Shown here one piece after another: positions 4,420 to 41,789 of a stretch of DNA of 49,558 bases. The position numbers and the translations under genes were made by a program. Each line of letters starts with the position of its first letter. Within the stretch, counting starts at the first letter, position 1. Origin of the DNA: Macrostomum lignano (Eukaryota); contig NIVC01004340.1 in the NCBI GenBank assembly GCA_002269645.1, positions 1-49,558 on the forward strand, read 5' to 3'. The notes under the pieces were generated by a model, which had not been told where the DNA came from, ran no database searches, and was given only the letters and a program-made list of their open reading frames with translations.

Positions 4420-7316
4420 ATGAAGTGGCACAACTCAATTATTGCACTACTCTACTTGTTCTGTACTCATCTGCATGCTCATAAGCCTGAAACCAAAATC
4501 AACAAGGCTGATAATTTTAAAGCTAGTGGACAGCCGACTCCAGCCACCGCAGTAGGCTCCAAGCCAAGATTCGCTCCACCAAAGCTACCAGATGGTGCAT
4601 ATTATGCGCAGTATTTTCCCGGCCCAGGAAGTCCAGCCGACCATGGTCTAGTTCTGTCCCAGTCAAAGAAGGACTCTGATGAGCTGGCAGACAAGTACGA
4701 TGGCCAGTGGTCCGTAGAGGTGCCGGATAGCTCTGCCATCGAGGGCGACTACGCTCTCGTGATGAAGAGTCCAGCAAAGCACTACGCCATCTCGGCCAAG
4801 CTCGACCGGCCATTTGTGTTCGACCAGCCCGACAAGCAATTTGTTCTGCAGTACGATGTGAAATTCCAGCACGGCATGGAGTGCGGCGGCGCCTATCTGA
4901 AACTGCTGACTGACAGTCCCAGCCTTAACCTGACAGAGTTCACTGACAGGACAGCCTACACTATCATGTTCGGGCCTGACAAATGCGGCCCGGAGCACAA
5001 GCTGCACTTTATACTGCGCCACCGCTGCCCAGCAACCGGCAATGTAGAAGAGAAACACGCCAGAAAGCCTCAAGTAGATTTGAGCGCCTACTTCAATGAC
5101 AAGCGAACTCACCTGTACACTCTGGTTGTCAGCTCGGACAACAGTTTCCAAGTGTATATCGATCAAGTGCTAGTTAACAATGGCAGCCTTCTGGAGGACC
5201 TCCAGCCGCCAGTGAATCCTCCGCCGGATGCGGACGATTCCACCGACCAGAAGCCGGCCGATTGGGATGATCGAGAAAAAATCCCAGATCCCAAAGCTGT
5301 CCGGCCGGCCGACTGGGACGAGTCGCAGTCGGAGTTCATCGACGATGCCCAGGCCAGCGTGCCGGCCGGCTGGCTGCTGGACGAGCCGCCGACCGTGCCC
5401 GACACGACGGCTAAAAAGCCGGCCGACTGGGATGACGACATCGACGGAGCCTGGCAGCCGGCGCACATCGAAAATCCCAAGTGAGAGGCCGGTGAATGCG
5501 TGCTCTTCATGCTACTCTTTTAGGGCACCTCTACCCCTCAGCTACTTCAGAGAGCACCTCTACACCCTCAGCTACTTCAGAGGGCACCTCTACACCCTCA
5601 GCTGCTTCAGGGGGCACCTCTACACCCTCAGCTACTTCAGAGGGCACCTCTACCCCCTCAGCTACTTCAGAGAGCACCTCTACACCCTCAGCTACTTCAG
5701 GGGGCACCTCTACACCCTCAGCTACTTCAGAGAGCCCCTCTACACCCTCAGCTACTTCAGGGGGCACCTCTACCCCTCAGCTACTTCAGAGAGCACCTCT
5801 ACACCCTCAGCTACTTCAGAGAGCCCCTCTACACCCTCAGCTACTTCAGGGGCGCCTCTACCTCTCAACTATCAGAAGGTGCCCCTACCCACTCACACTT
5901 TGAATTCCAAGGTGCAAAGACGCGCCCGGCTGCGGGCCATGGACTCGGCCGAAAGTGAGGAATCCCCTGTACCGTGGCCAGTGGACTCCGCCATTGGTGG
6001 ACAATCCGGCCTACAGAGGCGCCTGGCGACCCCGCCGGATTGCCAATGCGGATGGGTTCGTGGACAAGCAGCCTTGGAAATTTTCACCCATTGGTGCCAT
6101 CGGCTTTGAGCTCTGGTCCGTGACTGAAGGCGTCGCATTTGACAATTTGCTGATAGTCGATCGCAAGCCGCTAGCCGACTCCTTCGCCGATCAGACTTGG
6201 TCGATAAAGCGCCAGGCTGAGCGCCAACAGGACTCGGCTCTGCAGGCTGTTTTTGACGCGGTGCGCGATGCCACCAACGATAGGCCGTGGATTTGGGCGG
6301 CGCTGCTAGTTGGAGTTGTACTACCGGTAGTGCTACTCATTGCTTACTGTTGCTGTCTGCGCGAGAGCTCCCCAAGTTCGAAGGCCGCCGCCGCCGCCGC
6401 TCGGGCTAGGCGAAAGAAAACAGACGGAGACGATGACTATGATTATGATGATGAGGATGACGAAGATGACGATGATGATCTTGTCGATGATGCGGCGCCG
6501 GCAGCTGCGGAGGCTGACTATTATGACGACAGCGATGAACCGCCGGAACTGGTCGATTTGGACGCGCCTGACGATGAGTGAGTGTGGGTCCATGCTGGTT
6601 GCTGCTGCCCTCAGGGCTCTTCAGTAGGTGTGCTGCTGCCCTCAGGGCTCTTCAGTAGGTGTGCTGCTGCCCTCAGGGCTCTTCAGTAGGTGTGCTGCTG
6701 CCCTCGGTGCTCTTCAGTAGGTGTGCTGCTGCCCTCAGGGCTCTTCAGTAGGTGTGCTGCTGCCCTCGGTGCTCTTCAGTAGGTGTGCTGCTGCCCTCAG
6801 GGCTCTTCAGTAGGTGTGCTGCTGCCCTCGGTGCTCTTCAGTAGGTGTGCTGCTGCCCTCAGGGCTCTTCAGTAGGTGTGCTGCTGCCCACGGTGCTCTT
6901 CAGTAGGTGTGCTGCTTCCCTCAGGGCTCTTCAGTAGGTGTGCTGCTGCCCTCGGTGCTCTTCAGTAGGTGTGCTGCTTCCCTCAGGGCTCTTCAGTAGG
7001 TGTGCTGCTGCCCTCGGTGCTCTTCAGTAGGTGTGCTGCTTCCCTCAGGGCTCTTCAGTAGGTGTGCTGCTGCCCTCGGTGCTCTTCAGTAGGTGTGCTG
7101 CTACTGCTGTGTAATATTATTATTTTAAGTTAAGCTCGAAAAAATTATTTCTATTGAAAGTAGCGTCTATACTACAAATTCTCTATTATTGCCATTCACT
7201 TGAAACGAGAAAAGTGAGGTTTTTTATTTTGTTTTTTTTGCAGGCCAGAGGCGGAGCCGATCGGAGCGGAGCCCTCAGTCACGGGGCCGCGGCAGAGAAC
7301 AGTCGGAAAGGCCTGA
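4420..7316 (+). CDS. CANX: Calnexin, join(4420..5480,5912..6577,7244..7316), ~599 aa
   Basis: Signal peptide MKWHNSIIALLYLFCTHLHA; lectin-domain motifs ECGGAYLKLL and IMFGPDKCG; P-domain repeats (KPADWDD, IPDPKAVRPADWDE). Splicing restores NPK|CKDAPGCGPW. TM segment WIWAALLVGVVLPVVLLIAYCCCL, acidic tail, ending PRQRTVGKA*. All introns are GT-AG and frame-consistent; AATAAA at 7370-7375. Confidence 0.95.
5524..5862 (+). repeat. 30-bp minisatellite in calnexin intron 1 (~11 copies)
   Basis: Unit GGCACCTCTACACCCTCAGCTACTTCAGAG with variants. Confidence 0.92.
6600..7101 (+). repeat. 31-bp minisatellite in calnexin intron 2 (~16 copies, two alternating variants)
   Basis: Unit TGCTGCTGCCCTCAGGGCTCTTCAGTAGGTG alternating with the CCCTCGGTGCTC variant. 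Confidence 0.92.
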
Positions 7317-14114: not shown

Positions 14115-14247
14115 CACAGTCAGACAGACACTAAGACAGACAGATAGACAGCCAGACAGACAGACAGCCAGACAGCCAGACAGGTAGACAGACACAGACA
14201 GATAGAAAGACAGACAGACAGACAGACGGACAGACAAACAGCCAGCC

Positions 14248-14284
<37 letters not shown>

Positions 14285-14563
14285 GCCAGACAGACAGACA
14301 GACAGGTAGACAGACAGCCAGACAGACAGACAGACAGACAGCCAGACAGCCAGACAGACAGCCAGACAGACAGACAGAAAGCCAGACAGACAGCCAGACA
14401 GCCAGACAGACAGACAGACAGCCAGACAGACAGACAGAAAGCCAGACAGACAGCCAGACAGCCAGACAGCCAGACAGACAGCCAGACAGACAGACAGAAA
14501 GCCAGACAGACAGCCAGACAGCCAGACAGCCAGACAGACAGCCAGACAGACAGACAGAAAGCC

Positions 14564-14606
<43 letters not shown>

Positions 14607-14703
14607 AAGCCAGACAGACAGACAGACAGACAGACAGACAGCCAGACAGACAGAAAGCCAGACAGACAGACAGACAGACAGCCAGACAGACAGACAGAAA
14701 GCC

Positions 14704-14736
<33 letters not shown>

Positions 14737-14795
14737 GCCAGACAGACAGACAGAAAGCCAGACAGACAGACAGACAGACACAGACACAATCAGAC
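14115..14795 (+). repeat. Compound (CAGA)n microsatellite with CAGC/GAAA interruptions
   Basis: Read directly; explains the three-frame LSVC ORFs on the minus strand. Confidence 0.95.
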
Positions 14796-15409
14796 AAGTA
14801 TATTTAACCAGCAAAGGAAACTCAGAATTTGCCGAAGTCCTGCACACAAAAACAAAGTTGAGTTAAGCCGCACAACAAAGCAGAAATCGGAGGAAAAACA
14901 GACAAAAGCAGGGAAAAACAAATACAACTGCGACACAGAAATCCGAGCAGAAGCAAAATAAACTGGCCCGTGAGAAACAATCGCAAAATACTCGTAAATT
15001 CGAATTTCTCCAGCACAGACAGGGGCGCAAGGCTCTGTATTGAAGAGCAAGTTAATTAGCATCATTGATGATGCGCAGTGAAAATCCACACCGGCAATTA
15101 GTGCTGTAAACAGATTGGGCAGATGAATAAAATAAATTAATCAGCAACAGAGCCATACAATACTTGTCAGCGGATGGGACAAAATACACATGCTGTAGTG
15201 CGATTGCTATCAGTAATTAATGGTGGTAATTCTAATACTTTTAAGATGACGCTGGAATATTAGGTGTCAACACTGTGAGGCCTGTTATAAAAATTATCAG
15301 ACAAAAGGTGGTTGAGTTTTTGTTTTGAGAAGTTAATTCTTTCACTAATATAGGCCAAGATGAGACACAGGGGTAGGGAGAGGAAGGAAAGAAGAAAAAC
15401 CGGAGAGGA

Positions 15410-15415
15410 GGGAAG

Positions 15416-15461
<46 letters not shown>

Positions 15462-16290
15462 AGAGGTGGAGGGGAGAGAGGAGTGAGAAATACGGGAGAG
15501 AAGAGGGAAGAGGAAGAGGAAGGAGGGGAGAGAGGAGAAAGGAGGGGAGAGAGGAGGGAAGAGGAAGAGGAAGGAGGGGAGAGAGGAGAAAGGAGGGGAG
15601 AGAGGAGGGAAGGGAGGGAGGAGAGGAAAAAGGAGGGGAGAGAGGAGAAAGGAGGGGAGAGAGGAGAAAGGAGGGGAGAGAGAGGAGAAAGGAGGGGAGA
15701 GAGGAGAAAGGAGGGGAGAGAGGAGAAAGGAGGGGAGAGAGAGGAGAAAGGAGGGGAGAGAGAGGAGAAAGGAGGGGAGAGAGGAGAAAGGAGGGGAGAG
15801 AGGAGAAAGGAGGGGAGAGAGAGGAGAAAGGAGGGGAGAGAGGAGAAAGGAGGGGAGAGAGGAGAAAGGAGGGGAGAGAAAGGAGAAAGGAGGGGAGAGA
15901 GGAGAAAGGAGGGGAGAGACAGGAGAAAGGAGGGGAGAGAGGAGAAAGGAGGGGAGAGAGGAGAAAGGAGGGGAGAGAGGAGAAAGGAGGGGAGAGAGAG
16001 GAGAAAGGAGGGGAGAGACGAGAAAGGAGGGGAGAGAGGAGAAAGGAGGGGAGAGAGGAGAAAGGAGGGGAGAGAGAGGAGAAAGGAGGGGAGAGAGGAG
16101 AAAGGAGGGGAGAGAGGAGAAAGGAGGGGAGAGAGAGGAGAAAGGAGGGGAGAGAGGAGAAAGGAGGGGAGAGAGGAGAAAGGAGGGGAGAGAGAGGAGA
16201 AAGGAGGGGAGAGAGGAGAAAGGAGGGGAGAGAGGAGGGAAGGGAGGGGAGAGAGAAGGGAAAGGAGGGGAGAGAGGAAAGAAAGACGAG
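15410..16290 (+). repeat. Polypurine tract / 19-21-bp GAGAGGAGAAAGGAGGGGA minisatellite
   Basis: Almost exclusively A/G over ~880 nt. Confidence 0.93.
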
Positions 16291-16556
16291 GGAATACCAA
16301 AAAGAAAGAATTGAAAATCAATTAGACACCGAGGAAGATAGAGTGCAGAAACGCGGATGCCATCTCAAAGCATGAGTTCACCCGGTGCATCTGCAATATG
16401 CAGCAATATCGCAGCAAAATTAGCTAGCAAACCAAGACACCAAGCAAACCCAGCAATTAGGACAGGCAGCAGTGGAAGCGAGAATGGGGGTCAAAGGGTG
16501 TTGAATAGGCGATCAAATCCGGACACCGACAAGCTTCGAAGCTCCAGAGGCAGTCA

Positions 16557-16723: not shown

Positions 16724-16829
16724 CTGTGTGTATTGGGCGTGGTGTCAGTCAGTGAGTCTATTCTCCTGTCCATCTGTCTGGCTGAGTTAGAGGCTGTGTA
16801 GTGAGTTAGTAAGTCAGTAGGTCAGGGAC

Positions 16830-16830
<1 letters not shown>

Positions 16831-16874
<44 letters not shown>
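16831..16874 (+). repeat. (CTGT)11 microsatellite, left flank of the insertion
   Basis: Read directly. Confidence 0.95.
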
Positions 16875-18018
16875 GTTAGTGTATGTGTGTTTGCGTAGAC
16901 TCTCCGTCGGTTTAAAAGCCTCGTTAGCGGGACCTTTCGATTACATGGACCCTTTAAGTGGACCACTTTAAATTTCCTCGATGGGAAGTACAGAGAGGGT
17001 TTATCTTGACTGACTGCATAGTCTGAAAGGCAGCCATTACTGTGGCCAAAGTCCCTCTACTTAAAGTAGTTTAGATTTTAAGTATTGAGTATTTTAGTTT
17101 ACAAGGACCTTTAACACAGTCCACCCAAACCACATCGCTGAGGTCCACCTAACCCGAAAACAGACAAATTTCACACATACATAGTGTATGTTTTGTTTGT
17201 ATGAAAACTTATTTTTTATGATATAGCTCTTTAAAATGCGTGTTTAAGCACATTGTGGCATTTTTGAGTTGCAGAAGCAAGCTTACTAAACAGGCCGAAG
17301 TGATTGGAATGTAAAATAGCTCGTAAAATTGAAGTTTCTGCTACAAACGAAGCTCCGATGTAGCCCATAATGACTAAAAATTCACGAGATGGTTTTATTT
17401 ATTACTTGTGGTTTCTGAAACAAAACTGTTCACTAATAGTCCTGTCGCTATCATACTTGGAATAAATGCTTCATCAAGTGTTGATTTTAGAGAACCTAGA
17501 TTGAAGGCTATGCATGACTACATAATTTCTCATGCTGCATTTGCAGCATTGCTTAATTTAAGGAGACATAAAGACAAGAAGAGCCTTGCTTACAGCACGA
17601 ACTCCTAAAATAGTTTGTGTGCTTTATATTCAAACGTTTACAGCTTCGGCAACCGATAGGATAGGGCTGGATAATGAAACTTAAAAGCCGAACCATCCTG
17701 ACTGAGGTCCAAGCAAACCCCAAAGCTCATCAGCCAATCCTGTGCTTAAACGGACAGTCAAGAATGGGGTGGTTTAACTTTCATTCCTTACTGTCCGTCC
17801 GTTTGAACGTTGGTCATTTCCCTCTCTCCCTCCGAAGGGCTCTTATTGGTCTGTAGCTGGCTTATTCATCAAGGTCGAGGGTCTGAAATAGAGGGTCAAC
17901 GTAAACATCTTCCTAATCACAAAAACAGACACCAATTCCCAACCTCAAACAAGACTTTAACTTGAATTAGTTGGCCTCACAAGTTGGTTCTGCCAACTGG
18001 TTGTCCTTAACACGCCAG

Positions 18019-18301
18019 CATGCAGAAAAAAAGCCCCAAGCTAGTAGGCGTTTCTACGTTGAAAGGATTATCAAGTGCACGAAAAGGAAGCTCTACATAA
18101 AGTGGAAAGGATATTCAAGGTGAGTTTCAAAAGACTTATTCACCACTGCACTCTATTTATTATATATACTAAGAGTTGTTTCCATACGGCCATATCGGTT
18201 CGGCTAATAAACAGTGCTTTCATATTTTAGCAATCAAAAGTCTTGGGAGCCACGAAGCAACATACCAACAAGTGTGATTCAAAGTCTGCATTCATCTTGC
18301 G
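18019..18301 (+). CDS. Chromodomain-encoding exons of the element gene, join(18019..18119,18231..18301)
   Basis: Spliced translation RRFYVERIIKCTKRKLYIKWKGYS|SNQKSWEPRSNIPTSVIQ fits the chromodomain consensus (VE.I...Y.IKWKGY....WEP..N). The intron is GTGAGT...TTTTAG and phase-consistent. Absent from the ORF track. Confidence 0.8.
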
Positions 18302-19597
18302 GTAAGAATTTTTAGTCATCACGTGTAATAATCTTATTAAATAATTGACCGTCTAACTTGTGTCAGATAAAAACTGACAATCTAACTCTCTTTCAAAATC
18401 TACCAAACTCAAAACATTCCTGAAAAATGCTTCCCGCCGAACGAGCAGCAGAAAACGATGACGGTAGGAACTCCTGACTTAACTGTTACTTAGATGTATG
18501 CCACTTCATTCCGCAATCGAATCTTAAGGCACGATTTCATTCGAAAGCATTCCAATCTGAGAGGTGGGGTCCAGCTAAACCTTCATTGAATGTCGTTCAC
18601 ATTGACTGTGGGTGCTTCAAGCATCGACTGCCAAACAGACTTTCAGACATGGGGTCCAGCTAAACCCTCATTGAATGTCGTTCACATTGACTGTGGGTGC
18701 TTCAAGCACCGACTGCCAAACATACTTTCAGACATGGGGTCCAGCTAAACCTTCATTGAATGTCGTTCACATTGACTGTGGGTGCTTCAAGCATCTACTG
18801 CCAAACAGACTTTCAGACATGGGGTCCAGCTAAACCCTCATTGAATGTCGTTCACATTGACTGTGGGTGCTTCAAGCATCGACTGCCAAACATACTTTCA
18901 GACATTGGGTCCAGCTAAACCCTCATTGAATATCCTTCACATTGAGTGTGGATGCTTCAAGCACCGACTGCCAAACATACTTTCAGACATGGGGTCCAGC
19001 TAAACCCTCATTGATTGTCGTTCACATTGAGTGTGGATGCTTCAAGCACCGACTGCCAAACATACTTTCAGACATGGGGTCCAGCTAAACCCTCATTGAT
19101 TGTCGTTCACATTGAGTGTGGATGCTTCAAGCACCGACTGCCAAACATACTTTCAGACATGGGGTCCAGCTAAACCCTCATTGATTGTCGTTCACATTGA
19201 GTGTGGATGCTTCAAGCACCGACTGCCACATACTTTCAGACATGGGGTCCAGCTAAACCCTCATTGAATGTTTCACATTGACTGTGGGTGCTTCAAGCAT
19301 CGACTGCCAAACATACTTTCAGACATGGGGTCCAGCTAAACCCTCATTGAATGTTTCACATTGACTGTGGGTGCTTCAAGCATCGACTGCCAAACATACT
19401 TTCAGACATGGGGTCCAGCTAAACCCTCATTGAATGTCGTTCACATTGAGTGTGGATGCTTCAAGAACCGACTGCCAAACATACTTTCAGTCATGGGGTC
19501 CAGCTGAATCCTCATTGAGTCATAATATGTTTACATTGAGTATCAATGAGTACATATGAGTACATTGAGTAGTTCATCAAAATTAATCATTGTGCAG

Positions 19598-19984
19598 ATG
19601 GGCAGCGACGTGACCATCCCACAAGCAGAGGGATCTTCTGCTGATGCTGACGCTGGCGACAGCGAACCGTGTGCATCTCGCGATGAGTCGAGTGTAGAGA
19701 AGGCGGCTACGAAGAAGACGACTTCCGTTCATAAGTCGCGTGAACAGCTCTCAGCATCAGCCAGGGTGACGAGAGCTACTCAAGAGGCAGCGGCTGCTGG
19801 ACAAACCCGGAAAAACCATCCTGGAGACAAGAAGAGCTCTCCTAGTACCTTGGCGCTCCAGTCATCGAAGGAGAATGCTATGGTTGAGGAATCCGACTCA
19901 AGTGCTGCTGATCTCATGATCACGTCATCTGCTAACAAAATACAAGACCGGAAACCGTCACCACAGCGTCAGCATTTTGAATCG
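19598..19984 (+). CDS. Repeated phase-0 exon, copy 1 (129 codons, Ser/Ala/Glu/Lys-rich)
   Basis: TGTGCAG acceptor and GTGAGC donor bracket 387 nt within the 189-aa ORF. Confidence 0.6.
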
Positions 19985-21108
19985 GTGAGCATTGCTGAGT
20001 TGAGTTACACTAACGCTGGAAGAGTGCATTCGCTTTACTTAATGAATATCATTTTTATTGGGCCAAAAAATGCTGCAGCTTTCAATGTCTTAGTTTCGAT
20101 TGTAAAAAAGCAAACTTTATCATGACGTATGCCAAGTCAGCACAGTCAATCAAATTTCAGCATATTTGTCGCGGGTCCAGCTAAACCCTCATTGAATGTC
20201 GTTCACATTGACTGTGGGTGCTTCAAGCATCGACTGCCAAACATACTTTCAGACATGGGGTCCAGCTAAACCCTCATTGAATGTTTCACATTGACTGTGG
20301 GTGCTTCAAGCATCGACTGCCAAACATACTTTCAGACATGGGGTCCAGCTAAACCCTCATTGAATGTTTCACATTGACTGTGGGTGCTTCAAGCATCGAC
20401 TGCCAAACATACTTTCAGACATGGGGTCCAGCTAAACCCTCATTGAATGTTTCACATTGACTGTGGGTGCTTCAAGCATCGACTGCCAAACATACTTTCA
20501 GACATGGGGTCCAGCTAAACCCTCATTGAATGTTTCACATTGACTGTGGGTGCTTCAAGCATCGACTGCCAAACATACTTTCAGACATGGGGTCCAGCTA
20601 AACCCTCATTGAATGTTTCACATTGACTGTGGGTGCTTCAAGCATCGACTGCCAAACATACTTTCAGACATGGGGTCCAGCTAAACCCTCATTGAATGTT
20701 TCACATTGACTGTGGGTGCTTCAAGCATCGACTGCCAAACATACTTTCAGACATGGGGTCCAGCTAAACCCTCATTGAATGTTTCACATTGACTGTGGGT
20801 GCTTCAAGCATCGACTGCCAAACATACTTTCAGACATGGGGTCCAGCTAAACCCTCATTGAATGTTTCACATTGACTGTGGGTGCTTCAAGCATCGACTG
20901 CCAAACATACTTTCAGACATGGGGTCCAGCTAAACCCTCATTGAATGTCGTTCACATTGAGTGTGGATGCTTCAAGAACCGACTGCCAAACATACTTTCA
21001 GTCATGGGGTCCAGCTGAATCCTCATTGAGTCATAATATGTTTACATTGAGTATCAATGAGTACATATGAGTACATTGAGTAGTTCATCAAAATTAATCA
21101 TTGTGCAG

Positions 21109-21495
21109 ATGGGCAGCGACGTGACCATCCCACAAGCAGAGGGATCTTCTGCTGATGCTGACGCTGGCGACAGCGAACCGTGTGCATCTCGCGATGAGTC
21201 GAGTGTAGAGAAGGCGGCTACGAAGAAGACGACTTCCGTTCATAAGTCGCGTGAACAGCTCTCAGCATCAGCCAGGGTGACGAGAGCTACTCAAGAGGCA
21301 GCGGCTGCTGGACAAACCCGGAAAAACCATCCTGGAGACAAGAAGAGCTCTCCTAGTACCTTGGCGCTCCAGTCATCGAAGGAGAATGCTATGGTTGAGG
21401 AATCCGACTCAAGTGCTGCTGATCTCATGATCACGTCATCTGCTAACAAAATACAAGACCGGAAACCGTCACCACAGCGTCAGCATTTTGAATCG
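21109..21495 (+). CDS. Repeated phase-0 exon, copy 2
   Basis: Same sequence and splice sites as copy 1. Confidence 0.6.
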
Positions 21496-22287
21496 GTGAG
21501 CATTGCTGAGTTGAGTTACACTAACGCTGGAAGAGTGCATTCGCTTTACTTAATGAATATCATTTTTATTGGGCCAAAAAATGCTGCAGCTTTCAATGTC
21601 TTAGTTTCGATTGTAAAAAAGCAAACTTTATCATGACGTATGCCAAGTCAGCACAGTCAATCAAATTTCAGCATATTTGTCGCGGGTCCAGCTAAACCCT
21701 CATTGAATGTCGTTCACATTGACTGTGGGTGCTTCAAGCATCGACTGCCAAACATACTTTCAGACATGGGGTCCAGCTAAACCCTCATTGAATGTTTCAC
21801 ATTGACTGTGGGTGCTTCAAGCATCGACTGCCAAACATACTTTCAGACATGGGGTCCAGCTAAACCCTCATTGAATGTTTCACATTGACTGTGGGTGCTT
21901 CAAGCATCGACTGCCAAACATACTTTCAGACATGGGGTCCAGCTAAACCCTCATTGAATGTTTCACATTGACTGTGGGTGCTTCAAGCATCGACTGCCAA
22001 ACATACTTTCAGACATGGGGTCCAGCTAAACCCTCATTGAATGTTTCACATTGACTGTGGGTGCTTCAAGCATCGACTGCCAAACATACTTTCAGACATG
22101 GGGTCCAGCTAAACCCTCATTGAATGTCGTTCACATTGAGTGTGGATGCTTCAAGAACCGACTGCCAAACATACTTTCAGTCATGGGGTCCAGCTGAATC
22201 CTCATTGAGTCATAATATGTTTACATTGAGTATCAATGAGTACATATGAGTACATTGAGTAGTTCATCAAAATTAATCATTGTGCAG

Positions 22288-22674
22288 ATGGGCAGCGACG
22301 TGACCATCCCACAAGCAGAGGGATCTTCTGCTGATGCTGACGCTGGCGACAGCGAACCGTGTGCATCTCGCGATGAGTCGAGTGTAGAGAAGGCGGCTAC
22401 GAAGAAGACGACTTCCGTTCATAAGTCGCGTGAACAGCTCTCAGCATCAGCCAGGGTGACGAGAGCTACTCAAGAGGCAGCGGCTGCTGGACAAACCCGG
22501 AAAAACCATCCTGGAGACAAGAAGAGCTCTCCTAGTACCTTGGCGCTCCAGTCATCGAAGGAGAATGCTATGGTTGAGGAATCCGACTCAAGTGCTGCTG
22601 ATCTCATGATCACGTCATCTGCTAACAAAATACAAGACCGGAAACCGTCACCACAGCGTCAGCATTTTGAATCG
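22288..22674 (+). CDS. Repeated phase-0 exon, copy 3
   Basis: Same sequence and splice sites as copy 1. Confidence 0.6.
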
Positions 22675-23798
22675 GTGAGCATTGCTGAGTTGAGTTACAC
22701 TAACGCTGGAAGAGTGCATTCGCTTTACTTAATGAATATCATTTTTATTGGGCCAAAAAATGCTGCAGCTTTCAATGTCTTAGTTTCGATTGTAAAAAAG
22801 CAAACTTTATCATGACGTATGCCAAGTCAGCACAGTCAATCAAATTTCAGCATATTTGTCGCGGGTCCAGCTAAACCCTCATTGAATGTCGTTCACATTG
22901 ACTGTGGGTGCTTCAAGCATCGACTGCCAAACATACTTTCAGACATGGGGTCCAGCTAAACCCTCATTGAATGTTTCACATTGACTGTGGGTGCTTCAAG
23001 CATCGACTGCCAAACATACTTTCAGACATGGGGTCCAGCTAAACCCTCATTGAATGTTTCACATTGACTGTGGGTGCTTCAAGCATCGACTGCCAAACAT
23101 ACTTTCAGACATGGGGTCCAGCTAAACCCTCATTGAATGTTTCACATTGACTGTGGGTGCTTCAAGCATCGACTGCCAAACATACTTTCAGACATGGGGT
23201 CCAGCTAAACCCTCATTGAATGTTTCACATTGACTGTGGGTGCTTCAAGCATCGACTGCCAAACATACTTTCAGACATGGGGTCCAGCTAAACCCTCATT
23301 GAATGTTTCACATTGACTGTGGGTGCTTCAAGCATCGACTGCCAAACATACTTTCAGACATGGGGTCCAGCTAAACCCTCATTGAATGTTTCACATTGAC
23401 TGTGGGTGCTTCAAGCACCGACTGCCAAACATACTTTCAGACATGGGGTCCAGCTAAACCCTCATTGAATGTTTCACATTGACTGTGGGTGCTTCAAGCA
23501 TCGACTGCCAAACATACTTTCAGACATGGGGTCCAGCTAAACCCTCATTGAATGTTTCACATTGACTGTGGGTGCTTCAAGCATCGACTGCCAAACATAC
23601 TTTCAGACATGGGGTCCAGCTAAACCCTCATTGAATGTCGTTCACATTGAGTGTGGATGCTTCAAGAACCGACTGCCAAACATACTTTCAGTCATGGGGT
23701 CCAGCTGAATCCTCATTGAGTCATAATATGTTTACATTGAGTATCAATGAGTACATATGAGTACATTGAGTAGTTCATCAAAATTAATCATTGTGCAG

Positions 23799-24185
23799 AT
23801 GGGCAGCGACGTGACCATCCCACAAGCAGAGGGATCTTCTGCTGATGCTGACGCTGGCGACAGCGAACCGTGTGCATCTCGCGATGAGTCGAGTGTAGAG
23901 AAGGCGGCTACGAAGAAGACGACTTCCGTTCATAAGTCGCGTGAACAGCTCTCAGCATCAGCCAGGGTGACGAGAGCTACTCAAGAGGCAGCGGCTGCTG
24001 GACAAACCCGGAAAAACCATCCTGGAGACAAGAAGAGCTCTCCTAGTACCTTGGCGCTCCAGTCATCGAAGGAGAATGCTATGGTTGAGGAATCCGACTC
24101 AAGTGCTGCTGATCTCATGATCACGTCATCTGCTAACAAAATACAAGACCGGAAACCGTCACCACAGCGTCAGCATTTTGAATCG
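23799..24185 (+). CDS. Repeated phase-0 exon, copy 4
   Basis: Same sequence and splice sites as copy 1; one substitution in the downstream intron (ATGAAT to ATGAAA). Confidence 0.6.
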
Positions 24186-25473
24186 GTGAGCATTGCTGAG
24201 TTGAGTTACACTAACGCTGGAAGAGTGCATTCGCTTTACTTAATGAAAATCATTTTTATTGGGCCAAAAAATGCTGCAGCTTTCAATGTCTTAGTTTCGA
24301 TTGTAAAAAAGCAAACTTTATCATGACGTATGCCAAGTCAGCACAGTCAATCAAATTTCAGCATATTTGTCGCGGGTCCAGCTAAACCCTCATTGAATGT
24401 CGTTCACATTGACTGTGGGTGCTTCAAGCATCGACTGCCAAACATACTTTCAGACATGGGGTCCAGCTAAACCCTCATTGAATGTTTCACATTGACTGTG
24501 GGTGCTTCAAGCATCGACTGCCAAACATACTTTCAGACATGGGGTCCAGCTAAACCCTCATTGAATGTTTCACATTGACTGTGGGTGCTTCAAGCATCGA
24601 CTGCCAAACATACTTTCAGACATGGGGTCCAGCTAAACCCTCATTGAATGTTTCACATTGACTGTGGGTGCTTCAAGCATCGACTGCCAAACATACTTTC
24701 AGACATGGGGTCCAGCTAAACCCTCATTGAATGTTTCACATTGACTGTGGGTGCTTCAAGCATCGACTGCCAAACATACTTTCAGACATGGGGTCCAGCT
24801 AAACCCTCATTGAATGTTTCACATTGACTGTGGGTGCTTCAAGCATCGACTGCCAAACATACTTTCAGACATGGGGTCCAGCTAAACCCTCATTGAATGT
24901 TTCACATTGACTGTGGGTGCTTCAAGCATCGACTGCCAAACATACTTTCAGACATGGGGTCCAGCTAAACCCTCATTGAATGTTTCACATTGACTGTGGG
25001 TGCTTCAAGCACCGACTGCCAAACATACTTTCAGACATGGGGTCCAGCTAAACCCTCATTGATTGTCGTTCACATTGAGTGTGGATGCTTCAAGCATCGA
25101 CTGCCACATACTTTCAGACATGGGGTCCAGCTAAACCCTCATTGAATGTTTCACATTGAGTGTGGATGCTTCAAGCACCGACTGCCAAACATACTTTCAG
25201 ACATGGGGTCCAGCTAAACCCTCATTGAATGCTTCACATTGAGTGTGGATGCTTCAAGCATCGACTGCCAAACATACTTTCAGACATGGGGTCCAGCTAA
25301 ACCCTCATTGAATGTTTCACATTGAGTGTGGATGCTTCAAGCACCGACTGCCAAACATACTTTCAGACATGGGGTCCAGCTGAATCCTCATTGAGTCATA
25401 ATATGTTTACATTGAGTATCAATGAGTACATATGAGTACATTGAGTAGTTCATCAAAATCAATCATTGTGCAG

Positions 25474-26790
25474 ATGGGCAGCGACGTGACCATCCCACAA
25501 GCAGAGGGATCTTCTGCTGATGCTGACGCTGGCGACAGCGAACCGTGTGCATCTCGCGATGAGTCGAGTGTAGAGAAGGCGGCTACGAAGAAGACGACTT
25601 CCGTTCATAAGTCGCGTGAACAGCTCTCAGCATCAGCCAGGGTGACGAGAGCTACTCAAGAGGCAGCGGCTGCTGGACAAACCCGGAAAAACCATCCTGG
25701 AGACAAGAAGAGCAGTCCTGGTGTCTTGGCGCTCCCGAATTCTTCATCCGGACGTTCTCCCTTAAAGCAGTCTACGACGACGAATGTTCCGTTGACGAAT
25801 GAAGTTTCGAATTCAAGGCTGTCTGCTCTTAGAAGTCGTGTTATGAATAAGTTGCGATTTGGTGGTGCTCGATTAAAAAAATTAAAAGTTGACTTAGATG
25901 ACAGCAACGAAAGCGAAGAGAGTGATTTCGATGACGAAGTAGAGTTTGAGAAGGTGATGAATTCCTGTGTGGAAGAAAGTGCTGCCTTTGGCAATGTAGA
26001 TGATGTGCCTGAATTCGACTTTGGTGACGTCGAGCTCGAGGAGTTGTCGTCGGATCTACATCCAGCTCTTCAAATGATTGCTGACGAAAATGAAAAATTG
26101 GAGTCGAATGCACAGAAGAAGATGAAGGGCCGATCATTTGAGAATAAGCGTCATAATTGCGTTTTCTGTAATGAGCTGTTTTCTCAAATACGCCGGCATA
26201 TTATTCGTTGTCATAGTGATCAACTGGACGTGCAGCGCGCGCTATCTTATGGTTCTAATTCTAATGGTAAGCCTAAGTGAATATGCTTCTTACATCAAAA
26301 CTGAATAAATAGTCCACTGGTTTTAGTATTTGGATATTTATAGTTTGATCTAAATGGTTAGGTTTTAGTTTTTTAAAATGAAAACTAATTCTTTCAAATT
26401 TTGTCTGAAGCAAGTCAGAATTTACTCGTGCTTCAGTTTGGCACAATAGTTTTATTAGAACGCCTCTATATGTATGATTTAAACTGTCAGATCGATTGAT
26501 TCTTTTTTGTTGTGATCGTAAAGATTTATATTTAATTGGCTGCCTTTTTTAATTTCTCTGTTAGGTTACAATCGGGAGATGGACAGACTGCGACTTCTAG
26601 GCGATTTTCATCACAATATTGCTGTACTGAAGGATGAAAAGGACGGTAAAATTATTGTCTGTCGGGAGAAAAGCGTGACCATGGAGTCTACGGAAGTACA
26701 CACCTATCTTCCTTGTGTTCACTGCTTTGGATTTTTTACGGACGTGAAATAAGTCGCCACTGAGACCGCTGCAAATTTAGATCTAACTGT
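25474..26790 (+). pseudogene. 3' part of the element gene: exon 25474..26266 plus disrupted exon from 26565 (acidic region, C2H2-like finger, HN..VL / YLPC..C.GF motif)
   Basis: RHNCVFCNELFSQIRRHIIRCHSDQLDVQRALSY...|GYNREMDRLRLLGDFHHNIAVLKDEKDGKIIVCR...YLPCVHCFGFF is joined by a phase-1 GTAAG...TTAG intron. A frameshift follows in the T run at ~26732-26737, then a TGA at 26761 within the shifted SRH*DRC motif. Confidence 0.7.
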
Positions 26791-27078
26791 TAAAACTGTT
26801 AAAAATCTTCGTTGCTCTAGATTTTTATATTGGTCCACAGTATATTGGTCCACGTACACCATCATGTTCTAAAGGTCCGTTTAAACCTGGTCTACCTAAC
26901 AACATAGTTCGAATAGTTTAATTTACTCGAATTGAAGACCTTTTGAAATTAAAAAGGCAACAGTATTTTCCAAGCGTCTCAAATTAAGCTGGTTCCCCGA
27001 TTTTCTAACCATAACTAATTGGTCCACCTAACGCATTGTCAGAACAACGGTCTATGTAACCACACATACACTAGTATA

Positions 27079-27079
<1 letters not shown>

Positions 27080-27135
<56 letters not shown>
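27080..27135 (+). repeat. (CTGT)14 microsatellite, right flank of the insertion
   Basis: Read directly. Confidence 0.95.
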
Positions 27136-27176
27136 GTGGTGAGCCAGTAAGTGATTCAAATCAATCAGTCACAAAC

Positions 27177-28260: not shown

Positions 28261-29020
28261 ATATATAGCTTATTTAAAACTTTATTGTATTCTTTGTTGG
28301 CTCCCTAATAGGAAGCAGCAATTGCAGGGTCTGCTATTAGTTTGTCTATTAGCAGATGAATTTACTCTATAGTACATAGACTTAGAGATTTAGTATATTT
28401 GGATGATAAAGGTATTAATGACTTTAATTGACTACATTAACTAATCAATTAACTAACCAACAATTCACTAAACATTCAGGGGTTGATTTCTTTTTAACTA
28501 ATAAATAAATGTATATATAACTGAGTGGCTCTATTCAAAATGAAAGGAAACAATTTGCTACAGTTTGTTTACATTTGATAGTGTTAAATAATTTGTAAGG
28601 TCAATATTGTATTCCTTTATTTTGGTATTTAACCATGACTTTTTAACCTATATTGTTTGAAATTCTTATTACAGTTTTTCTTTGAGGTAAATTTGATCAC
28701 TTTTACAACCATGCAAATAAAAAACTAATTATCAACATTTTGTAATTTTTAACATTGCAACGCATTTTGATCATCATTGATCATTCTCAAGCAAATCTTA
28801 GTTATATTTGAAAACAAAACAGAGTTTAAACGATGACATATATGTAAGATGTGTTAAAAATTCAAATATTACGCAGTCAGTAGAATGAAGGAAATATTCA
28901 CCAGTCACAATCTAATGTACAAAAGAGCAGAAAAGAATCATGTACATTCAGCCTCAAGCTACTACACACAAATAATTGCCAACTCAAAAAACCCTTATCG
29001 AATGGCCTGCACCAGTGCAT

Positions 29021-29290
29021 CAGCTGTGTGTTCAATGAGGGGTTTAATTTCTTAATGTACAATGCCTCCAGAATGCTGAGTTTGAAATCTAAGTCACAGT
29101 GATCAATAATCTCAAACAAGTCTGTGGGCTCACTGTTGCAACAATCATTGCATAGTAGCAGATGTTTATGGATTGCAGAATTCTTCAGCCAGTGTTCTCT
29201 TACCCTGGTATGCAAGTGTCTTTTAGTTTTTCCAATGTAGGAAATGCTCCAATCACCAGAGCAGTAAAAGTTGTAGACAACACCAGCACA
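29021..29290 (-). mobile_element. Penelope-like retroelement relic, GIY-YIG endonuclease fragment
   Basis: VVYNFYC...SYIGKTKRHLHTRVREH...SAIHKH...FEII...LSILEALYIKKLNPSLNTQ is the typical C-terminal GIY-YIG domain of Penelope-like elements. No RT is visible. Confidence 0.85.
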
Positions 29291-31021
29291 CAGAGTACAA
29301 AGAACACTAGACTTCAATTTGCTCACAAACATGTCACAATGTTACAAATTACAAAATGTTGATAATTAGTTTTTCTTTCCCTTATTTTTCTTTACCATAA
29401 ACTTTTTATTTCAACAAAAACTATATATTCCAATTATTGAAGTATTGACTATCTATATTTTATTTATCTTAACAAAACTTTAAAAATAGCAATAAAGAAG
29501 TAAATAGAAATTAAAAATAGAAAAAAACAGCTGATTATTTTTATAAAATGTTGCGTTAAATAATATTTCATTGCTTCATTGCTAGCTATTGTTTCTATTA
29601 GATATAATAGTAGCAAACTATTGTTTACCCTAAGGTAGAATTTTTGAAGGTAGAAGGTAGAAATAAAATCTTGGATGCATTCCATGCACACTAACAAAAA
29701 CTTGTGCATTTGTATATGTATTTTGACAAATTTTCATAATTATAAAAGACTTATGTGCATGCAAGCTTTTGTTTGTTCAAAAACATGCATGATTTTATTT
29801 TAAAATGTTGAATATTGCATTTGTTTGAATAAAACTAAGTTATAACATTTAAAAGAAAAGCCACTGAGCATTATATTAACAATGAAAGAGAATTAAAAAC
29901 TTTTTATGTCTTTATTTAAACTTTAAAGAAATATCTTTAAAAAGTTACTTACAAAATTTAAATGCCAAAAGACTTGCACAGTTTAAAGTAAAAAACTTAT
30001 ATAAAAAATTAGTGTGCAACTTTTTATTACAAAATTGCCATGCAAAGACTCTGTCCTAGTATTTAATTTATTAACCCTAGCAGGGACTAATAAACAAACT
30101 ATAATAGTAGATAAAATCTACAGTCTGGATCATGGTATGCCTGTGCCAAAATAAATCTTGCGCCTGAAAAAAATACTATAAAAAAGTTTGGCTTATACTA
30201 TATACTAGAAATATTCCTATCAAAAAGTTTGCTTGCATCATATACTGCAAATTTCTAAAAAAATGCAAAAAATAGTAATTTTTGTTTGAAAAATACTAGT
30301 ATTAGTAAAACTTGTATTTGAATCTGTTTTATAGAAAATACAATGTTAATACATATTAATTAAAAAAGCCATCAATACATTATATATAAAAAATTCTAAT
30401 AAAAAGAAATAACTTGCTAATTTTTCTATCAAAGAAAATATTATCACATTAGAAGTTTTGGTCGTATCAAATTATACTAATTTTTTCATCTTGTGCTACT
30501 GCTACACTACACCAGATTTTTTCTATTGTCTGCTATTGCACAAAAATGCACCATTGTGGTGAATATCCAACCCTCTTTTGCACCAGAATTTTCTGTGAAA
30601 AAAGCCATCTTCTTGACTAGGCCTATGGGATAAAATGACTTATACCCTTGATGAATAGTCACTAAGACCTAAAATTAACCAACTAAAATTACAACTTTGA
30701 TCTTAAAGAATATCCGAAACCTAAGATACAAACATTTAAGAATTTTATAGGCCATAATATTAATAATGCTCAAATATTTTAAATTACTATAACGTATAAG
30801 TAATTAATATTTAAAAATGTAACTTGAAGTTGAAGGCTTAAAGAGCTGAAACTTAAAGAAAGATTCTAGAATGATTTTAAAATGACCTGCACAAAAATTT
30901 TTATTGCAATATATTGATTTTTTGTAAGAAATTTAGTTAAAAACTATATAGTAGATTTGATTTTGGATATAAAAATGCAATTAATAATTCTTTGTCTCTT
31001 GTAGACTGCTCTGCTACATAC

Positions 31022-36146: not shown

Positions 36147-37924
36147 GTTGCATACTCCACAACAGCTTATGCCAGTGAGTAATGAGAGATTTATGACACA
36201 TATTTAGCTTTAAATTTCCGAAAAGCAGATACTGTCAAATATTGAGAAACCACACGGAAATGGCTGTACAGCACAAGAGCGGCAGTCAGTTTCTGGCATA
36301 CCCAGCAAGCGCAGGTGAAATTCACAATAAAAGCTGACGGTTTGATGCGGGCCGTCTGTCCGCTCAAAACAGCTCGTAATTGAGTTGCTAGCTGCGCTGA
36401 GTTATCTGGCTCACTAAACCCGTATGTAGGCGGTTCTCCAGGAACAAAATTCCGAAAAATCGAGGGAAGTCCTCCCCCCCCTGTGATGACGCAACCCACC
36501 AACCAGCCCCAGCTGAAATATAAATATTGCAGTATTTTAATGCAGGTCAGAGCTATCCGCATTTAATAAATGGTACACAACAGTTGAGGCTTGTAAAAGC
36601 CTAACGCAGAAGACATTATTATAAATGCAACATAATGTTTAACTATGGAATGGTGATCGTAAATAATAATTATCTCCTGTAATAAACTTGTGTCAGAAAA
36701 TTTATATTCGGAGCCTTATATGCTATAATGTATAAGAGCTATAAGCATAATGGGGATAATTTCGGGACCAGGGATTCGATACAACCCGCCGACTTCAAAC
36801 GTATTTTTTATATACAACAACTATAGGACTCGACAGAAGTCAACTTAGACTGCCGAGGTCGACAGACGGACCCCGGCTCCATAAAAAACTTTACAGAAGG
36901 GTCGTGAGCCACCCTCTGTCGATGCAGAGCTGAATAAAATAAAATTGAAAAAACCAACTCTCGTTGGAATGGCGCCATTCGTTATCCGTGTTCAGGACAG
37001 GGATTTATGTTGAAATTGGGGAACTTATAGGAAAAAACAACAATAGCTACACTATAACTCATCGAGGAAGCGCTCAGACTCTGGCTCTGGGATGCTTTTT
37101 GAGAGTTGGGAAAGGCAGTCGTGGAAGTGGGAGGAAGCCCTGCTTTTTGGCTGCACACACAAGGATGCAGGTCTACAATTGCCACTTTGCCCTAAGACCT
37201 CCGAAGACCTCCAAGTCCAAACTCTACAGGGCGTGACTGCATGCAGTTCCATATCAACCGTCGAGAGAGGGAGAGAGAGTGGGGCATAGGGCGGCACAGA
37301 TGGCCCAGTTCTCGACTTCTCGGCTATACATGCATGTGTTAAGACATTTTGGGAGAATTTGGGACTGGGGCGGCCGTGTCCGGGAATAGGGTCTCCAGAG
37401 CACTGCTGCTGCAACTGCGCCGTGAAGCCAGCAGCTATAAGAGGCACCGACTGCACGTTCGCTGGGATCCTCCCCTAGCTGCATACGAAAATATTCTGCT
37501 TTTATAACAACTTGATTTAGTCTTCGCCGAAGCTTAAATCTAAAAAAAGAACAGTTAGCTGAAAAAGCAGTTTCTAACCGAACTTCTCATCTAATTTGTC
37601 TACGAGCGTATATTGAAAATCTCTATAAAAGATAGACGGCTTCTTGCCTTTCATTAATTATATTTCAATACAAATTCGCCTTGGGGTTTTCTCCGTATAC
37701 TGCATGTGAACAACAATTCAGTTGAGCGTTAAGAGTTTTTAAAGCAATAAAAAATATAAAAATTTAGGACAGTTTTCTAGAACAGTTAATTTGTAGAACA
37801 TTTGCTTTTTGTACGAGCCTGTTTGAAGCGAACAGCGGACCAGTAGTAATATAGGGGGAAACATCCCTTTTACAACTTCACAGCAGCTGCGATTTGTGAT
37901 TGGAGGGGGCGCGTCTTTGGAGGA

Positions 37925-41308: not shown

Positions 41309-41789
41309 TTATCTACAGTCAATCTTATTTTTTTCACTTCAAATGTTGTGTCTCCGCCCAGGGGCTTATCTTAGGTAACAATTTTAAATTTATCTTAAAA
41401 ATTTCAGTTCACATATTCAATAAATAGGTCCCTTGGACTGTCAGAACTTCGCTGTCAGCAAATATGCATCTTTATACTTTCCTCTCAGTCTCTCCATCCT
41501 CCTACCTTTAGTATCTTCAGCAAGGCCGGTTTGTTTATGCGTATAGCGAATGCATGAATGGAACTGCTGTGCGAGTATTCTGTTTCCGTTGTTGCCTGTT
41601 ACTTATGTTATGACGAAAAAGGCCTTGTCAAACTCAATGCAGCACGTGCCACTACGGGTTGCACCAGTTGGGACAGAACTGACCTAGACCATTCTTCACA
41701 TTGTTGAAAGTTCCCCCATCATCAACCAGCCATTAATCCCCGATTAGAGATCCCATTGTCCAGGCATCATCCATGCCAATAAATCGAAT

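What the first reader, a model, noticed from the sequence alone, without database searches (positions are those of the whole stretch)
16877..27073. 10.2-kb TIR-bounded element filling PGRMC intron 2 and carrying its own spliced antisense gene
Seen: 24-bp inverted termini (21/24 identical), inverted subterminal GGACC/GGTCC motif clusters, and (CTGT)n on both sides. Removing the element leaves an intron of about 250 nt instead of 10,453 nt. The interior holds a multi-exon gene on the strand opposite the host. Inference: a large cargo-bearing DNA element that I cannot place confidently in a standard superfamily. This copy lacks any visible transposase or recombinase, so it would be an internally deleted derivative of an autonomous family.
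Basis: partly seen in the sequence, partly recalled or inferred. Interest (0 to 1): 0.8.

Follow-up and report, generated by a model that had tools for sequence, protein, structure and literature searches.

The report
Microsatellite-targeting tyrosine-recombinase transposon, deleted copy
The 10.2-kb insert in this flatworm gene's intron is a broken copy of a mobile DNA element that probably moves with a tyrosine recombinase, has inverted ends unlike described relatives, and in all four copies examined sits inside a (CTGT)n microsatellite.

Summary
The window is a whole contig of Macrostomum lignano (GCA_002269645.1).

- **Family and copies.** Three further copies with the same 24-bp inverted termini lie at unrelated loci. 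They are 8.8, 15.9 and 38.4 kb long and 97-99.9% identical.
- **Target.** All four copies sit in the same orientation inside a (CTGT)n microsatellite, with identical junctions and no target-site duplication.
- **Empty site.** A paralogous PGRMC locus keeps an uninterrupted (CTGT)n array at exactly this intron position.
- **The interior gene is not cargo.** It is the element's only gene. Its domains run chromodomain, two zinc-finger motifs, then a roughly 430-aa domain. That domain's catalytic half models as a tyrosine-recombinase fold and conserves R, K, R, H and Y.
- **Damage in the window copy.** It carries two 1-bp frameshifts, a TGG>TGA stop and a 2,735-bp deletion that removes the whole recombinase domain.

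Most likely mechanism (inferred): conservative site-specific recombination of a circular intermediate with genomic (CTGT)n.

It is closest to Cryptons. It differs in having inverted termini, a chromodomain, microsatellite targeting and no DUF3504 match. I rate it a new variant of a known kind.

The parts
16830..16876 (.). Left half of the split target microsatellite: (CTGT)11 followed by GT
   Evidence: TRF. The junction CTGTCTGTGT|TAGTG is identical in all four copies.
16877..16900 (+). Left terminal inverted repeat, TAGTGTATGTGTGTTTGCGTAGAC
   Evidence: (I2). The same sequence lies at L001 8870, L002 1770 and L003 8873.
16901..17150 (+). Left subterminal region carrying inward-facing (T)GGACC motifs (16930, 16947, 16960, 17105)
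18020..18119 (+). Exon 1 of the element's gene: the start codon and the first half of the chromodomain. An A8>A7 frameshift lies at 18026-18032.
   Evidence: Pfam Chromo, E = 1.5e-7. tblastn with P0001, plus comparison of the A-run with L001.
18231..18301 (+). Exon 2: second half of the chromodomain (…SWEPRSNI…)
   Evidence: GT/AG intron at 18120-18230 read.
18422..18464 (+). Short exon encoding EKCFPPNEQQKTMT. The 5' boundary is approximate, because I saw no canonical AG acceptor.
   Evidence: tblastn of P0001 residues 58-78; sequence.
18565..25394 (+). Higher-order tandem array of 83/85-bp satellite units, each containing GGGGTCCAGC. It is interrupted by four identical truncated copies of a cassette exon at 19598-19987, 21109-21498, 22288-22677 and 23799-24188.
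   Evidence: The number of cassette units is 3, 5, 9 and 25 in the four element copies.
25474..26266 (+). Large exon corresponding to P0001 residues 201-465: an acidic region and the first zinc-finger motif (CVFCNELF…HIIRCH)
   Evidence: 98% identity to P0001.
26565..26788 (+). Remnant of the last exon with the second zinc-finger motif. It has a T7>T6 frameshift at 26732-26737 and TGG>TGA at 26761-26763. It ends at the deletion junction 26788/26789.
26789..27049 (+). Right subterminal region with GGTCC motifs (26832, 26847, 26874, 27021). It follows a 2,735-bp deletion (L001 14651-17385 is missing here) that removed the recombinase domain and the 3' UTR.
27050..27073 (-). Right terminal inverted repeat
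27074..27135 (.). GTATAT followed by (CTGT)14, the right half of the split target microsatellite. Together with the terminus it forms CACACATAC-ACTA-GTATATCTG, an inverted repeat matching 7/9 here and 8/9 in the other three copies.

Best explanation
Window 16877-27073 is a non-autonomous, internally deleted copy of a recently active DNA transposon family of Macrostomum lignano.

The family's only gene encodes four successive parts:
- a chromodomain;
- two zinc-finger motifs (C-x2-C … H-x4-CH and C-x2-C…);
- a core-binding plus catalytic domain of tyrosine-recombinase type;
- a C-terminal tail.

**Shown**
- The family has at least four copies at unrelated loci with the same termini.
- Every copy lies inside a (CTGT)n microsatellite, in one orientation, with identical junctions and no target-site duplication.
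- A paralogous locus shows the unoccupied microsatellite.
- The window copy has lost the recombinase domain.

**Inferred**
- The recombinase excises the element as a circle. In that circle the two 13-24-bp inverted termini flank a short CTGT-type tract.
- The recombinase then integrates the circle by conservative strand exchange inside a genomic (CTGT)n array. This would explain why arrays lie on both sides and why nothing is duplicated.
- The termini are themselves an in-phase degenerate (TGTN)n tract, so a protein that reads them would also read the target.
- The window copy could move only if a full-length copy supplied recombinase in trans.
- The GGACC repeats and the GGTCC-bearing satellite may be accessory binding sites, and the chromodomain may tether the protein to chromatin. 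Both are speculation.
For: **Family and autonomous copies**
- phmmer found PAA76011.1, 1184 aa and 94% identical to the window protein.
- Its locus L001 holds an 8,778-bp copy with the same termini.
- L002 (15.9 kb) and L003 (38.4 kb) hold two more.
- Copies are 97-99.9% identical.
- Flanks beyond the microsatellite are unrelated.

**Target**
- All four copies have (CTGT)n on both sides, the same orientation and the same junctions.
- Such arrays make up at most 1.6% of the surrounding DNA, so chance for four of four is below 1e-7.
- No CTGTCTGT occurs inside the element.

**Empty site**
- L005, a paralogous PGRMC locus, has flanks 95-99% identical to the window. Its intron 2 holds only a roughly 280-bp (CTGT)n array.

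**Recombinase**
- An AlphaFold model of the catalytic half reached pLDDT 82 and pTM 0.77.
- The seven best PDB matches to it are all tyrosine recombinases, and the list then drops to noise. They are five XerA 5hxy chains (probability 1.00, E = 3e-3), VchIntIA (2a3v) and HP1 integrase (1aih).
- Conserved residues are R 17/18, K 40/41, R 45/47, H 45/46 and Y 44/47. The H-to-Y spacing is 9, as I recall for XerD.
- Pfam Phage_integrase matches 3 of 17 members weakly.
- The full copy has no other ORF of 90 aa or more apart from antisense overlaps.

**Lesions in the window copy:**

**DNA-based movement**
- The gene keeps its introns in every copy.

**Precedents**
- The Crypton model and observed Crypton activity: PMC3212892, PMC9977147.
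- Tandem-repeat-specific tyrosine recombinases of endogenous nimaviruses: PMC10871703.
Against: - **Fold evidence is moderate.** TM-scores are 0.40-0.45 and the best Foldseek E-value is 3e-3. A model of the whole 475-aa region gave no significant match.
- **No sequence-level match.** Profile searches of PDB sequences found no recombinase.
- **One catalytic residue differs.** The first histidine of the classical HxxR box is a conserved threonine.
- **No direct evidence of the mechanism.** I saw no circular form or excision footprint, and only four copies could be examined.
- **The circle junction is atypical.** The two inverted arms would be separated by a repeat tract longer than the 6-8-bp spacer of canonical sites.
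- **The left junction is asymmetric.** It has no inverted partner in the flank.
Confidence: 0.75

Rival explanations
1. It is a classical cut-and-paste transposon. An unseen DDE transposase encoded elsewhere recognises the inverted termini and subterminal repeats. The chromodomain/zinc-finger/recombinase-like protein is an accessory or captured gene.
For: Inverted termini plus subterminal short repeats are typical of DDE transposons. Described animal Cryptons have no terminal repeats (PMC3212892). A TA or YTAG reading of the junction is just possible.
Against: No consistent target-site duplication fits. TTAG/CTAG, TTA/TAG and TA readings all require ignoring the constant GT and GTATGT linkers present in all four copies. 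The full copies encode no other ORF. No DDE domain appeared in Pfam scans of the proteins. One fixed orientation relative to an asymmetric microsatellite in four of four copies is not expected of DDE insertion.
Confidence: 0.1
2. The element spreads passively. Ectopic homologous recombination or gene conversion between (CTGT)n arrays copies the segment from one microsatellite to another, without site-specific catalysis by its protein.
For: Long perfect (CTGT)n arrays flank every copy and would serve as homology arms. An unrelated 310-bp insert sits in the same array in L004, so this microsatellite accepts other sequences too.
Against: The junctions are identical to the base in four copies. There are defined inverted termini, and the recombinase-type gene is conserved and intact in three copies at 99.8-99.9% identity. 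These features are those of an enzyme-defined element.
Confidence: 0.08
3. It is a tyrosine-recombinase retrotransposon (DIRS/Ngaro-like) whose reverse-transcriptase part has been lost.
For: DIRS elements have inverted terminal repeats and a tyrosine recombinase (PMC13465315).
Against: The full-length copies show no RT or RNase H in Pfam scans or in their ORFs. The gene keeps its introns in every copy. No internal complementary region was seen.
Confidence: 0.02
4. It is not a mobile element. The copies are segmental duplications or assembly artefacts of a repeat-rich polyploid genome.
For: The genome is highly repetitive (background knowledge). The internal units are 100% identical, which could partly reflect how the assembler handled arrays.
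Against: The four flanks are unrelated. Homology ends exactly at the inverted termini. The paralogous locus is empty.
Confidence: 0.02

Closest known systems
Crypton DNA transposons (Goodwin et al. 2003; Kojima & Jurka 2011, PMC3212892)
   Same: The only enzyme encoded is a tyrosine recombinase. There is no target-site duplication. The same short sequence lies on both sides of the insert and once at the empty site, as in the circle-integration model. Non-autonomous deletion derivatives exist. CryptonF-1_cRei has been seen inserting at CAYCG and excising cleanly (PMC9977147).
   Different: Described Cryptons have no terminal inverted repeats, and animal Cryptons have no terminal repeats at all. 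This element has 24-bp inverted termini and subterminal repeats. Its target is a microsatellite array rather than a 4-6-bp motif. Its protein carries an N-terminal chromodomain and two zinc-finger motifs. None of 17 family members matched DUF3504, the CryptonA hallmark. Its interior holds a variable higher-order tandem array that includes a cassette exon.
Telomere-repeat- and rDNA-specific tyrosine recombinases of endogenous nimaviruses in crustaceans (PMC10871703)
   Same: [quoted passage not shown] Two members of the present family gave weak SAM-like Pfam hits.
   Different: Those are 200-300-kb viral genomes, whereas this is a single-gene element of 9-38 kb. Homology between the two recombinase families was not tested. 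The telomere-targeting viruses lack defined inverted repeats.
lox/FRT/att-type recombination sites of prokaryotic, phage and yeast tyrosine recombinases
   Same: Perfect 13-bp inverted arms would be expected to face each other across a crossover region once the element is circular. The right junction reads as 9-bp inverted arms (8/9) around ACTA.
   Different: The tract between the arms is a repeat of variable length, not a fixed 6-8-bp spacer. The target offers direct repeats rather than inverted half-sites.
Microsatellite-specific retrotransposons and DDE elements (for example the Ginger2-bearing sesarmid nimaviruses in (AT)n, PMC10871703)
   Same: They use a microsatellite as a harmless, multicopy landing site.
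   Different: They use a different enzyme class and different junction anatomy (target-site duplications or target-primed reverse transcription).

Membership tests
Crypton (tyrosine-recombinase-only DNA transposons) | Encodes a tyrosine recombinase with the catalytic R…(H)xxR…H/W…Y residues | tested here: met
   The seven best Foldseek matches to the modelled catalytic half are all tyrosine recombinases. R, K, R, H and Y are conserved in 94-98% of members. The first His of HxxR is Thr. Pfam PF00589 matches only weakly, in 3 of 17 members. This holds for the full-length copies; the window copy has lost the domain.
Crypton (tyrosine-recombinase-only DNA transposons) | No reverse transcriptase, DDE transposase or other mobility enzyme | tested here: met
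   The full copy in L001 holds one gene. Pfam finds only Chromo in P0001.
Crypton (tyrosine-recombinase-only DNA transposons) | No terminal inverted repeats; short (4-6 bp) direct repeats at the termini, or none in animal Cryptons | tested here: not met
   All four copies have 24-bp inverted termini plus inverted subterminal homology. The flanking direct repeats are whole (CTGT)n arrays.
Crypton (tyrosine-recombinase-only DNA transposons) | Insertion without target-site duplication; the empty site keeps one copy of the flanking repeat | tested here: met
   The empty site in L005 is one continuous (CTGT)n array between the same flanks.
CryptonA subgroup | Recombinase domain recognised as DUF3504 (PF12012) | tested here: not met
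   None of 17 family members, scanned at E up to 1, had DUF3504 among the matching families.
DIRS/Ngaro/VIPER tyrosine-recombinase retrotransposons | RT and RNase H domains; inverted terminal repeats with an internal complementary region, or split direct repeats | tested here: not met
   No RT/RNase H was found. Introns are retained in all copies.
DDE cut-and-paste superfamilies (Tc1/mariner, PIF/Harbinger, CACTA, Ginger, hAT and others) | DDE transposase plus a fixed-length target-site duplication flanking the inverted termini | tested here: not met
   No DDE gene was found. No consistent duplication fits the four junction pairs. The termini read TAGTG…CACTA, the reverse of CACTA ends.
Starship/Enterprise giant elements | DUF3435 'captain' recombinase at the 5' end, large cargo, fungal host | tested here: not met
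   No DUF3435 hit appeared. The element holds a single gene and no cargo, and the host is a flatworm.
Nimavirus-type tandem-repeat-specific tyrosine recombinases | Sequence homology to the majanivirus recombinase family | not tested
   No reference sequence was at hand. The resemblance rests on the domain description in PMC10871703.

The most novel reading that the evidence does not exclude
This is the first readable example of an undescribed, metazoan-wide superfamily of tyrosine-recombinase DNA transposons. Relatives of the zinc-finger-plus-recombinase protein occur in fish, echinoderms and corals, and Pfam does not recognise the catalytic domain. Here both halves of the recombination site (the inverted arms) and a microsatellite 'safe-harbour' target are visible. 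The enzyme would be a natural eukaryotic integrase programmed for (CTGT)n arrays.
Probability: 0.35. Interest if true: 0.75.

Novelty: new variant of a known kind. Interest (0 to 1): 0.6.

Why it matters
Eukaryotic tyrosine-recombinase DNA transposons are poorly understood. Their ends are usually unreadable, and activity has been seen directly only in Chlamydomonas.

This family supplies what has been missing in animals:
- sharply defined ends;
- a defined repetitive target;
- an empty site;
- near-identical autonomous and deleted copies;
- a lab-tractable host in which transgenesis exists.

It therefore makes the Crypton circle-integration model directly testable. It also points to a recombinase that lands DNA in a harmless multicopy sequence.

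It bears on genome annotation too. Intron size variation in M. lignano (256 nt against 10.4 kb here) and 9-38-kb length variation between copies both come from one element with an expanding internal array.

Tried and rejected
- **Junctions read as DDE target-site duplications.** I tried TA (Tc1/mariner), TTA/TAG (PIF/Harbinger), TTAG/CTAG with TGT…ACA ends (Ginger or integrase-like) and CACTA. All were rejected: none is consistent across the four copies, and no DDE or integrase gene exists.
- **Word-indexed search with the 340-aa window protein.** It found nothing. The exhaustive phmmer search was needed.
- **Exact-product look-ups.** Look-ups of the 282-aa and 189-aa ORFs, and of P0002 and P0010, found nothing.
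- **PDB sequence searches.** Profiles of the whole C-terminal region and of the catalytic half found no recombinase.
- **Model of the 475-aa region.** It was too poor in the catalytic part for a significant fold match. Only the 240-aa model worked.
- **Rfam.** No family matched the window or the L004 insert.
- **Distant relatives.** A Patiria miniata locus (L006) holds only fragments. An ENA contig (L007) holds a near-full gene but no recognisable inverted termini or flanking microsatellite, and with a single copy its ends cannot be defined. Whether relatives share the architecture remains inconclusive.
- **Bacterial promoter/terminator scan.** It is irrelevant for a eukaryote.


Full report
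**Observation**

The 24-nt arms 16877-16900 and 27050-27073 are inverted copies matching at 21/24, and the outer 13 nt are perfect (I2). That 13-mer occurs nowhere else in the window, where 0.05 matches are expected by chance.

The ends share more than the arms. GCGTTAGnnGGACC lies about 45 nt in from each end and GTTTAnAnGGACCTTTA about 220 nt in. Inward-facing GGACC motifs occur four times within about 230 nt at each end (Poisson P about 1e-6).

(CTGT)11 and (CTGT)14 abut the element.

The host is a PGRMC-like cytochrome-b5 gene on the minus strand. My spliced product is identical to the deposited protein PAA47767.1. Intron 2 is 16724-27176, which is 10,453 nt, and would be 256 nt without the element.

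**Source**

The PGRMC protein cluster lists PAA47767.1 on a contig of exactly 49,558 bp. The window is thus a whole contig of the Macrostomum lignano assembly GCA_002269645.1.

**Anatomy of the interior**

On the plus strand the element carries one gene.
- Two exons (18020-18119 and 18231-18301) encode a chromodomain (Pfam Chromo, E = 1.5e-7).
- A short exon follows near 18422-18464.
- Then comes a 6.8-kb array of 83/85-nt satellite units (18565-25394). It is interrupted by four 100%-identical copies of a roughly 650-nt module that contains a cassette exon.
- A fifth module continues into a large exon (25474-26266), an intron, and a last-exon remnant (26565-26788).
- Together these encode an acidic region and two zinc-finger motifs.

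**Relatives and the autonomous form**

A word-indexed search found nothing. An exhaustive phmmer search found 1,062 relatives. The best is PAA76011.1 of M. lignano, 1184 aa and 94% identical.

That protein starts with the chromodomain and runs through the repeated exon and the zinc-finger region. It then continues for about 650 residues that the window lacks.

Its locus L001 contains an 8,778-bp element with the same termini. Two paralogous proteins led to copies of 15.9 kb (L002) and 38.4 kb (L003). Length differences come from the number of satellite-plus-exon modules, which is 3, 5, 9 and 25. Copies are 97-99.9% identical, so the family has been active recently.

**What is broken in the window copy**

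Relative to L001 the window copy has four lesions:
- A8>A7 just after the start codon (18026-18032).
- T7>T6 at 26732-26737.
- TGG>TGA at 26761-26763.
- A 2,735-bp deletion (L001 14651-17385). It joins 26788 to 26789 and removes codons from about 541 to 1184, plus the 3' UTR.

The interior gene, however, is the stump of the element's own enzyme gene and not cargo.

**The enzyme**

The missing C-terminal region is conserved together with the zinc-finger region in many animal proteins.

Pfam does not recognise it. Only 3 of 17 members give a weak Phage_integrase hit, and none matches DUF3504 or DUF3435. PDB sequence profiles find nothing.

A model of the whole region was poor in its catalytic part. 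A model of the 240-residue catalytic half, built from 47 sequences, reached pLDDT 82 and pTM 0.77. Its seven best PDB matches are all tyrosine recombinases, after which scores fall to noise: five XerA chains (5hxy; best probability 1.00, E = 3e-3), VchIntIA and the HP1 integrase catalytic domain.

The family conserves the following residues:

| Motif | Residue | Conservation |
|---|---|---|
| LFNRRRxGE | R | 17/18 |
| RGKRGRxVPVLL | K | 40/41 |
| TSTxLRK | R | 45/47 |
| TSTxLRK | T at the usual His position | 44/47 |
| LGH | H | 45/46 |
| FYR | Y | 44/47 |

These are collinear with XerD's R-K-HxxR-H-Y, and the H-to-Y spacing is 9 as in XerD. The XerD comparison rests on my own knowledge of that sequence.

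I regard the tyrosine-recombinase assignment as well supported but not proven. The full copies encode nothing else.

**Target and empty site**

All four copies lie between (CTGT)n arrays, and all have the gene's strand reading CTGT. The junctions are identical: …CTGTCTGTGT|TAGTG… on the left and …CACTA|GTATGTCTGT… on the right, with one G>A change in the window.

Beyond the arrays the flanks are unrelated, so these are independent insertions. Such arrays cover at most 1.6% of the neighbouring DNA. There is no target-site duplication, and no CTGTCTGT occurs inside the element.

Two syntenic paralogues or homeologues of the PGRMC locus were recovered.
- In L005 the same intron, between flanks 95-99% identical to the window, holds only an uninterrupted (CTGT)n array of about 280 bp. 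This is the empty site.
- In L004 the array contains a different, unrelated 310-bp insert.

**Mechanism**

What is shown:
- a single-gene element with a tyrosine-recombinase-type enzyme;
- precise ends;
- the same repeat on both sides of the insert and once at the empty site;
- a fixed orientation;
- introns retained in every copy.

I infer from this the Crypton-type pathway (Goodwin's model as summarised in PMC3212892; activity observed in PMC9977147). The element is excised as a circle and integrated by conservative strand exchange within sequence shared by donor and target. Here that shared sequence is the CTGT repeat.

In the circle the two termini would face each other as inverted arms. 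This is the standard layout of a tyrosine-recombinase site (PMC3212892).

Two details fit this reading:
- The left terminus is an in-phase degenerate continuation of the repeat (TGTC TGTC TGTG TTAG TGTA TGTG TGTT TGCG).
- The right junction reads CACACATAC-ACTA-GTATGTCTG, 9-nt inverted arms matching 8/9 in three copies and 7/9 in the window.

Two details do not fit neatly:
- The tract between the arms would be longer than a canonical 6-8-nt spacer.
- The left junction has no inverted partner in its flank.

The roles of the GGACC repeats, the GGTCC-bearing satellite and the chromodomain are speculative.

**Comparison with known systems**

The element works like a Crypton but fails one defining feature. 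Cryptons, and animal Cryptons in particular, are described as lacking terminal repeats. It also lacks the DUF3504 signature of CryptonA.

It is not a DIRS/Ngaro element, because it has no RT and keeps its introns. It is not a DDE transposon, because it has no transposase and no duplication. It is not a Starship.

The nearest functional precedent for a zinc-finger-bearing tyrosine recombinase that targets tandem repeats is the endogenous nimaviruses of crustaceans (PMC10871703). Homology to that recombinase family was not tested.

No paper in the held library links Macrostomum with Cryptons.

**Verdict**

This is a real mobile element, correctly spotted. It is a deleted copy of a Crypton-like tyrosine-recombinase transposon with inverted termini and (CTGT)n-specific insertion. 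I rate it a new variant of a known kind, of moderate to good interest.

Noticed in passing
window 28898-29332 (-): A 144-aa ORF matches the Pfam GIY-YIG domain (E = 1.2e-6). It lies in PGRMC intron 1 and is probably a remnant of a Penelope-like retroelement endonuclease.
   Followed up: partly
L004 14250-14560 (paralogous PGRMC intron 2): A different insert of about 310 bp (ATAGCTTGGCC…(CT)n…TTTATTTCAG) sits inside the same (CTGT)n array. It has no similarity to the element, no inverted termini and no Rfam match. A second, unidentified sequence has therefore landed in this microsatellite.
   Followed up: partly
window 18565-25394; L001, L002, L003: The internal module (83-bp satellite array plus a cassette exon with its own splice sites) is present 3, 5, 9 and 25 times in the four copies. 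This makes the element 8.8 to 38.4 kb long. Units within one copy are 100% identical, and the annotated mRNA of L001 includes the cassette exon twice.
   Followed up: partly
proteins P0003-P0150, P0156-P0189: The zinc-finger-plus-recombinase protein family occurs in teleosts (Engraulis, Phyllopteryx), a sea star (Patiria) and a coral (Montipora). It often appears as giant gene models with up to nine tandem copies of the zinc-finger region. Pfam does not recognise its catalytic domain.
   Followed up: partly
window 14116-14780, 15406-16292, 37870-39677, 41773-44700: The contig is dense in long tandem arrays: (ACAG)n-type arrays, purine-rich 19/59-bp repeats just downstream of PGRMC, and GC-rich repeats that give long spurious ORFs in several frames.
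   Followed up: no
window 4414-6581 (+): Calnexin/calreticulin-like exons lie here. The gene order PGRMC, EF-hand gene, calreticulin is kept in L004 and L005, which shows these are paralogous or homeologous loci of this polyploid genome.
   Followed up: partly
window 46916-48079 (+): A 387-aa ORF contains a stretch (…WRCSKRFCSATA…FHNH…) that looks like a FLYWCH-type zinc finger. This is only my reading of the translation and was not tested.
   Followed up: no
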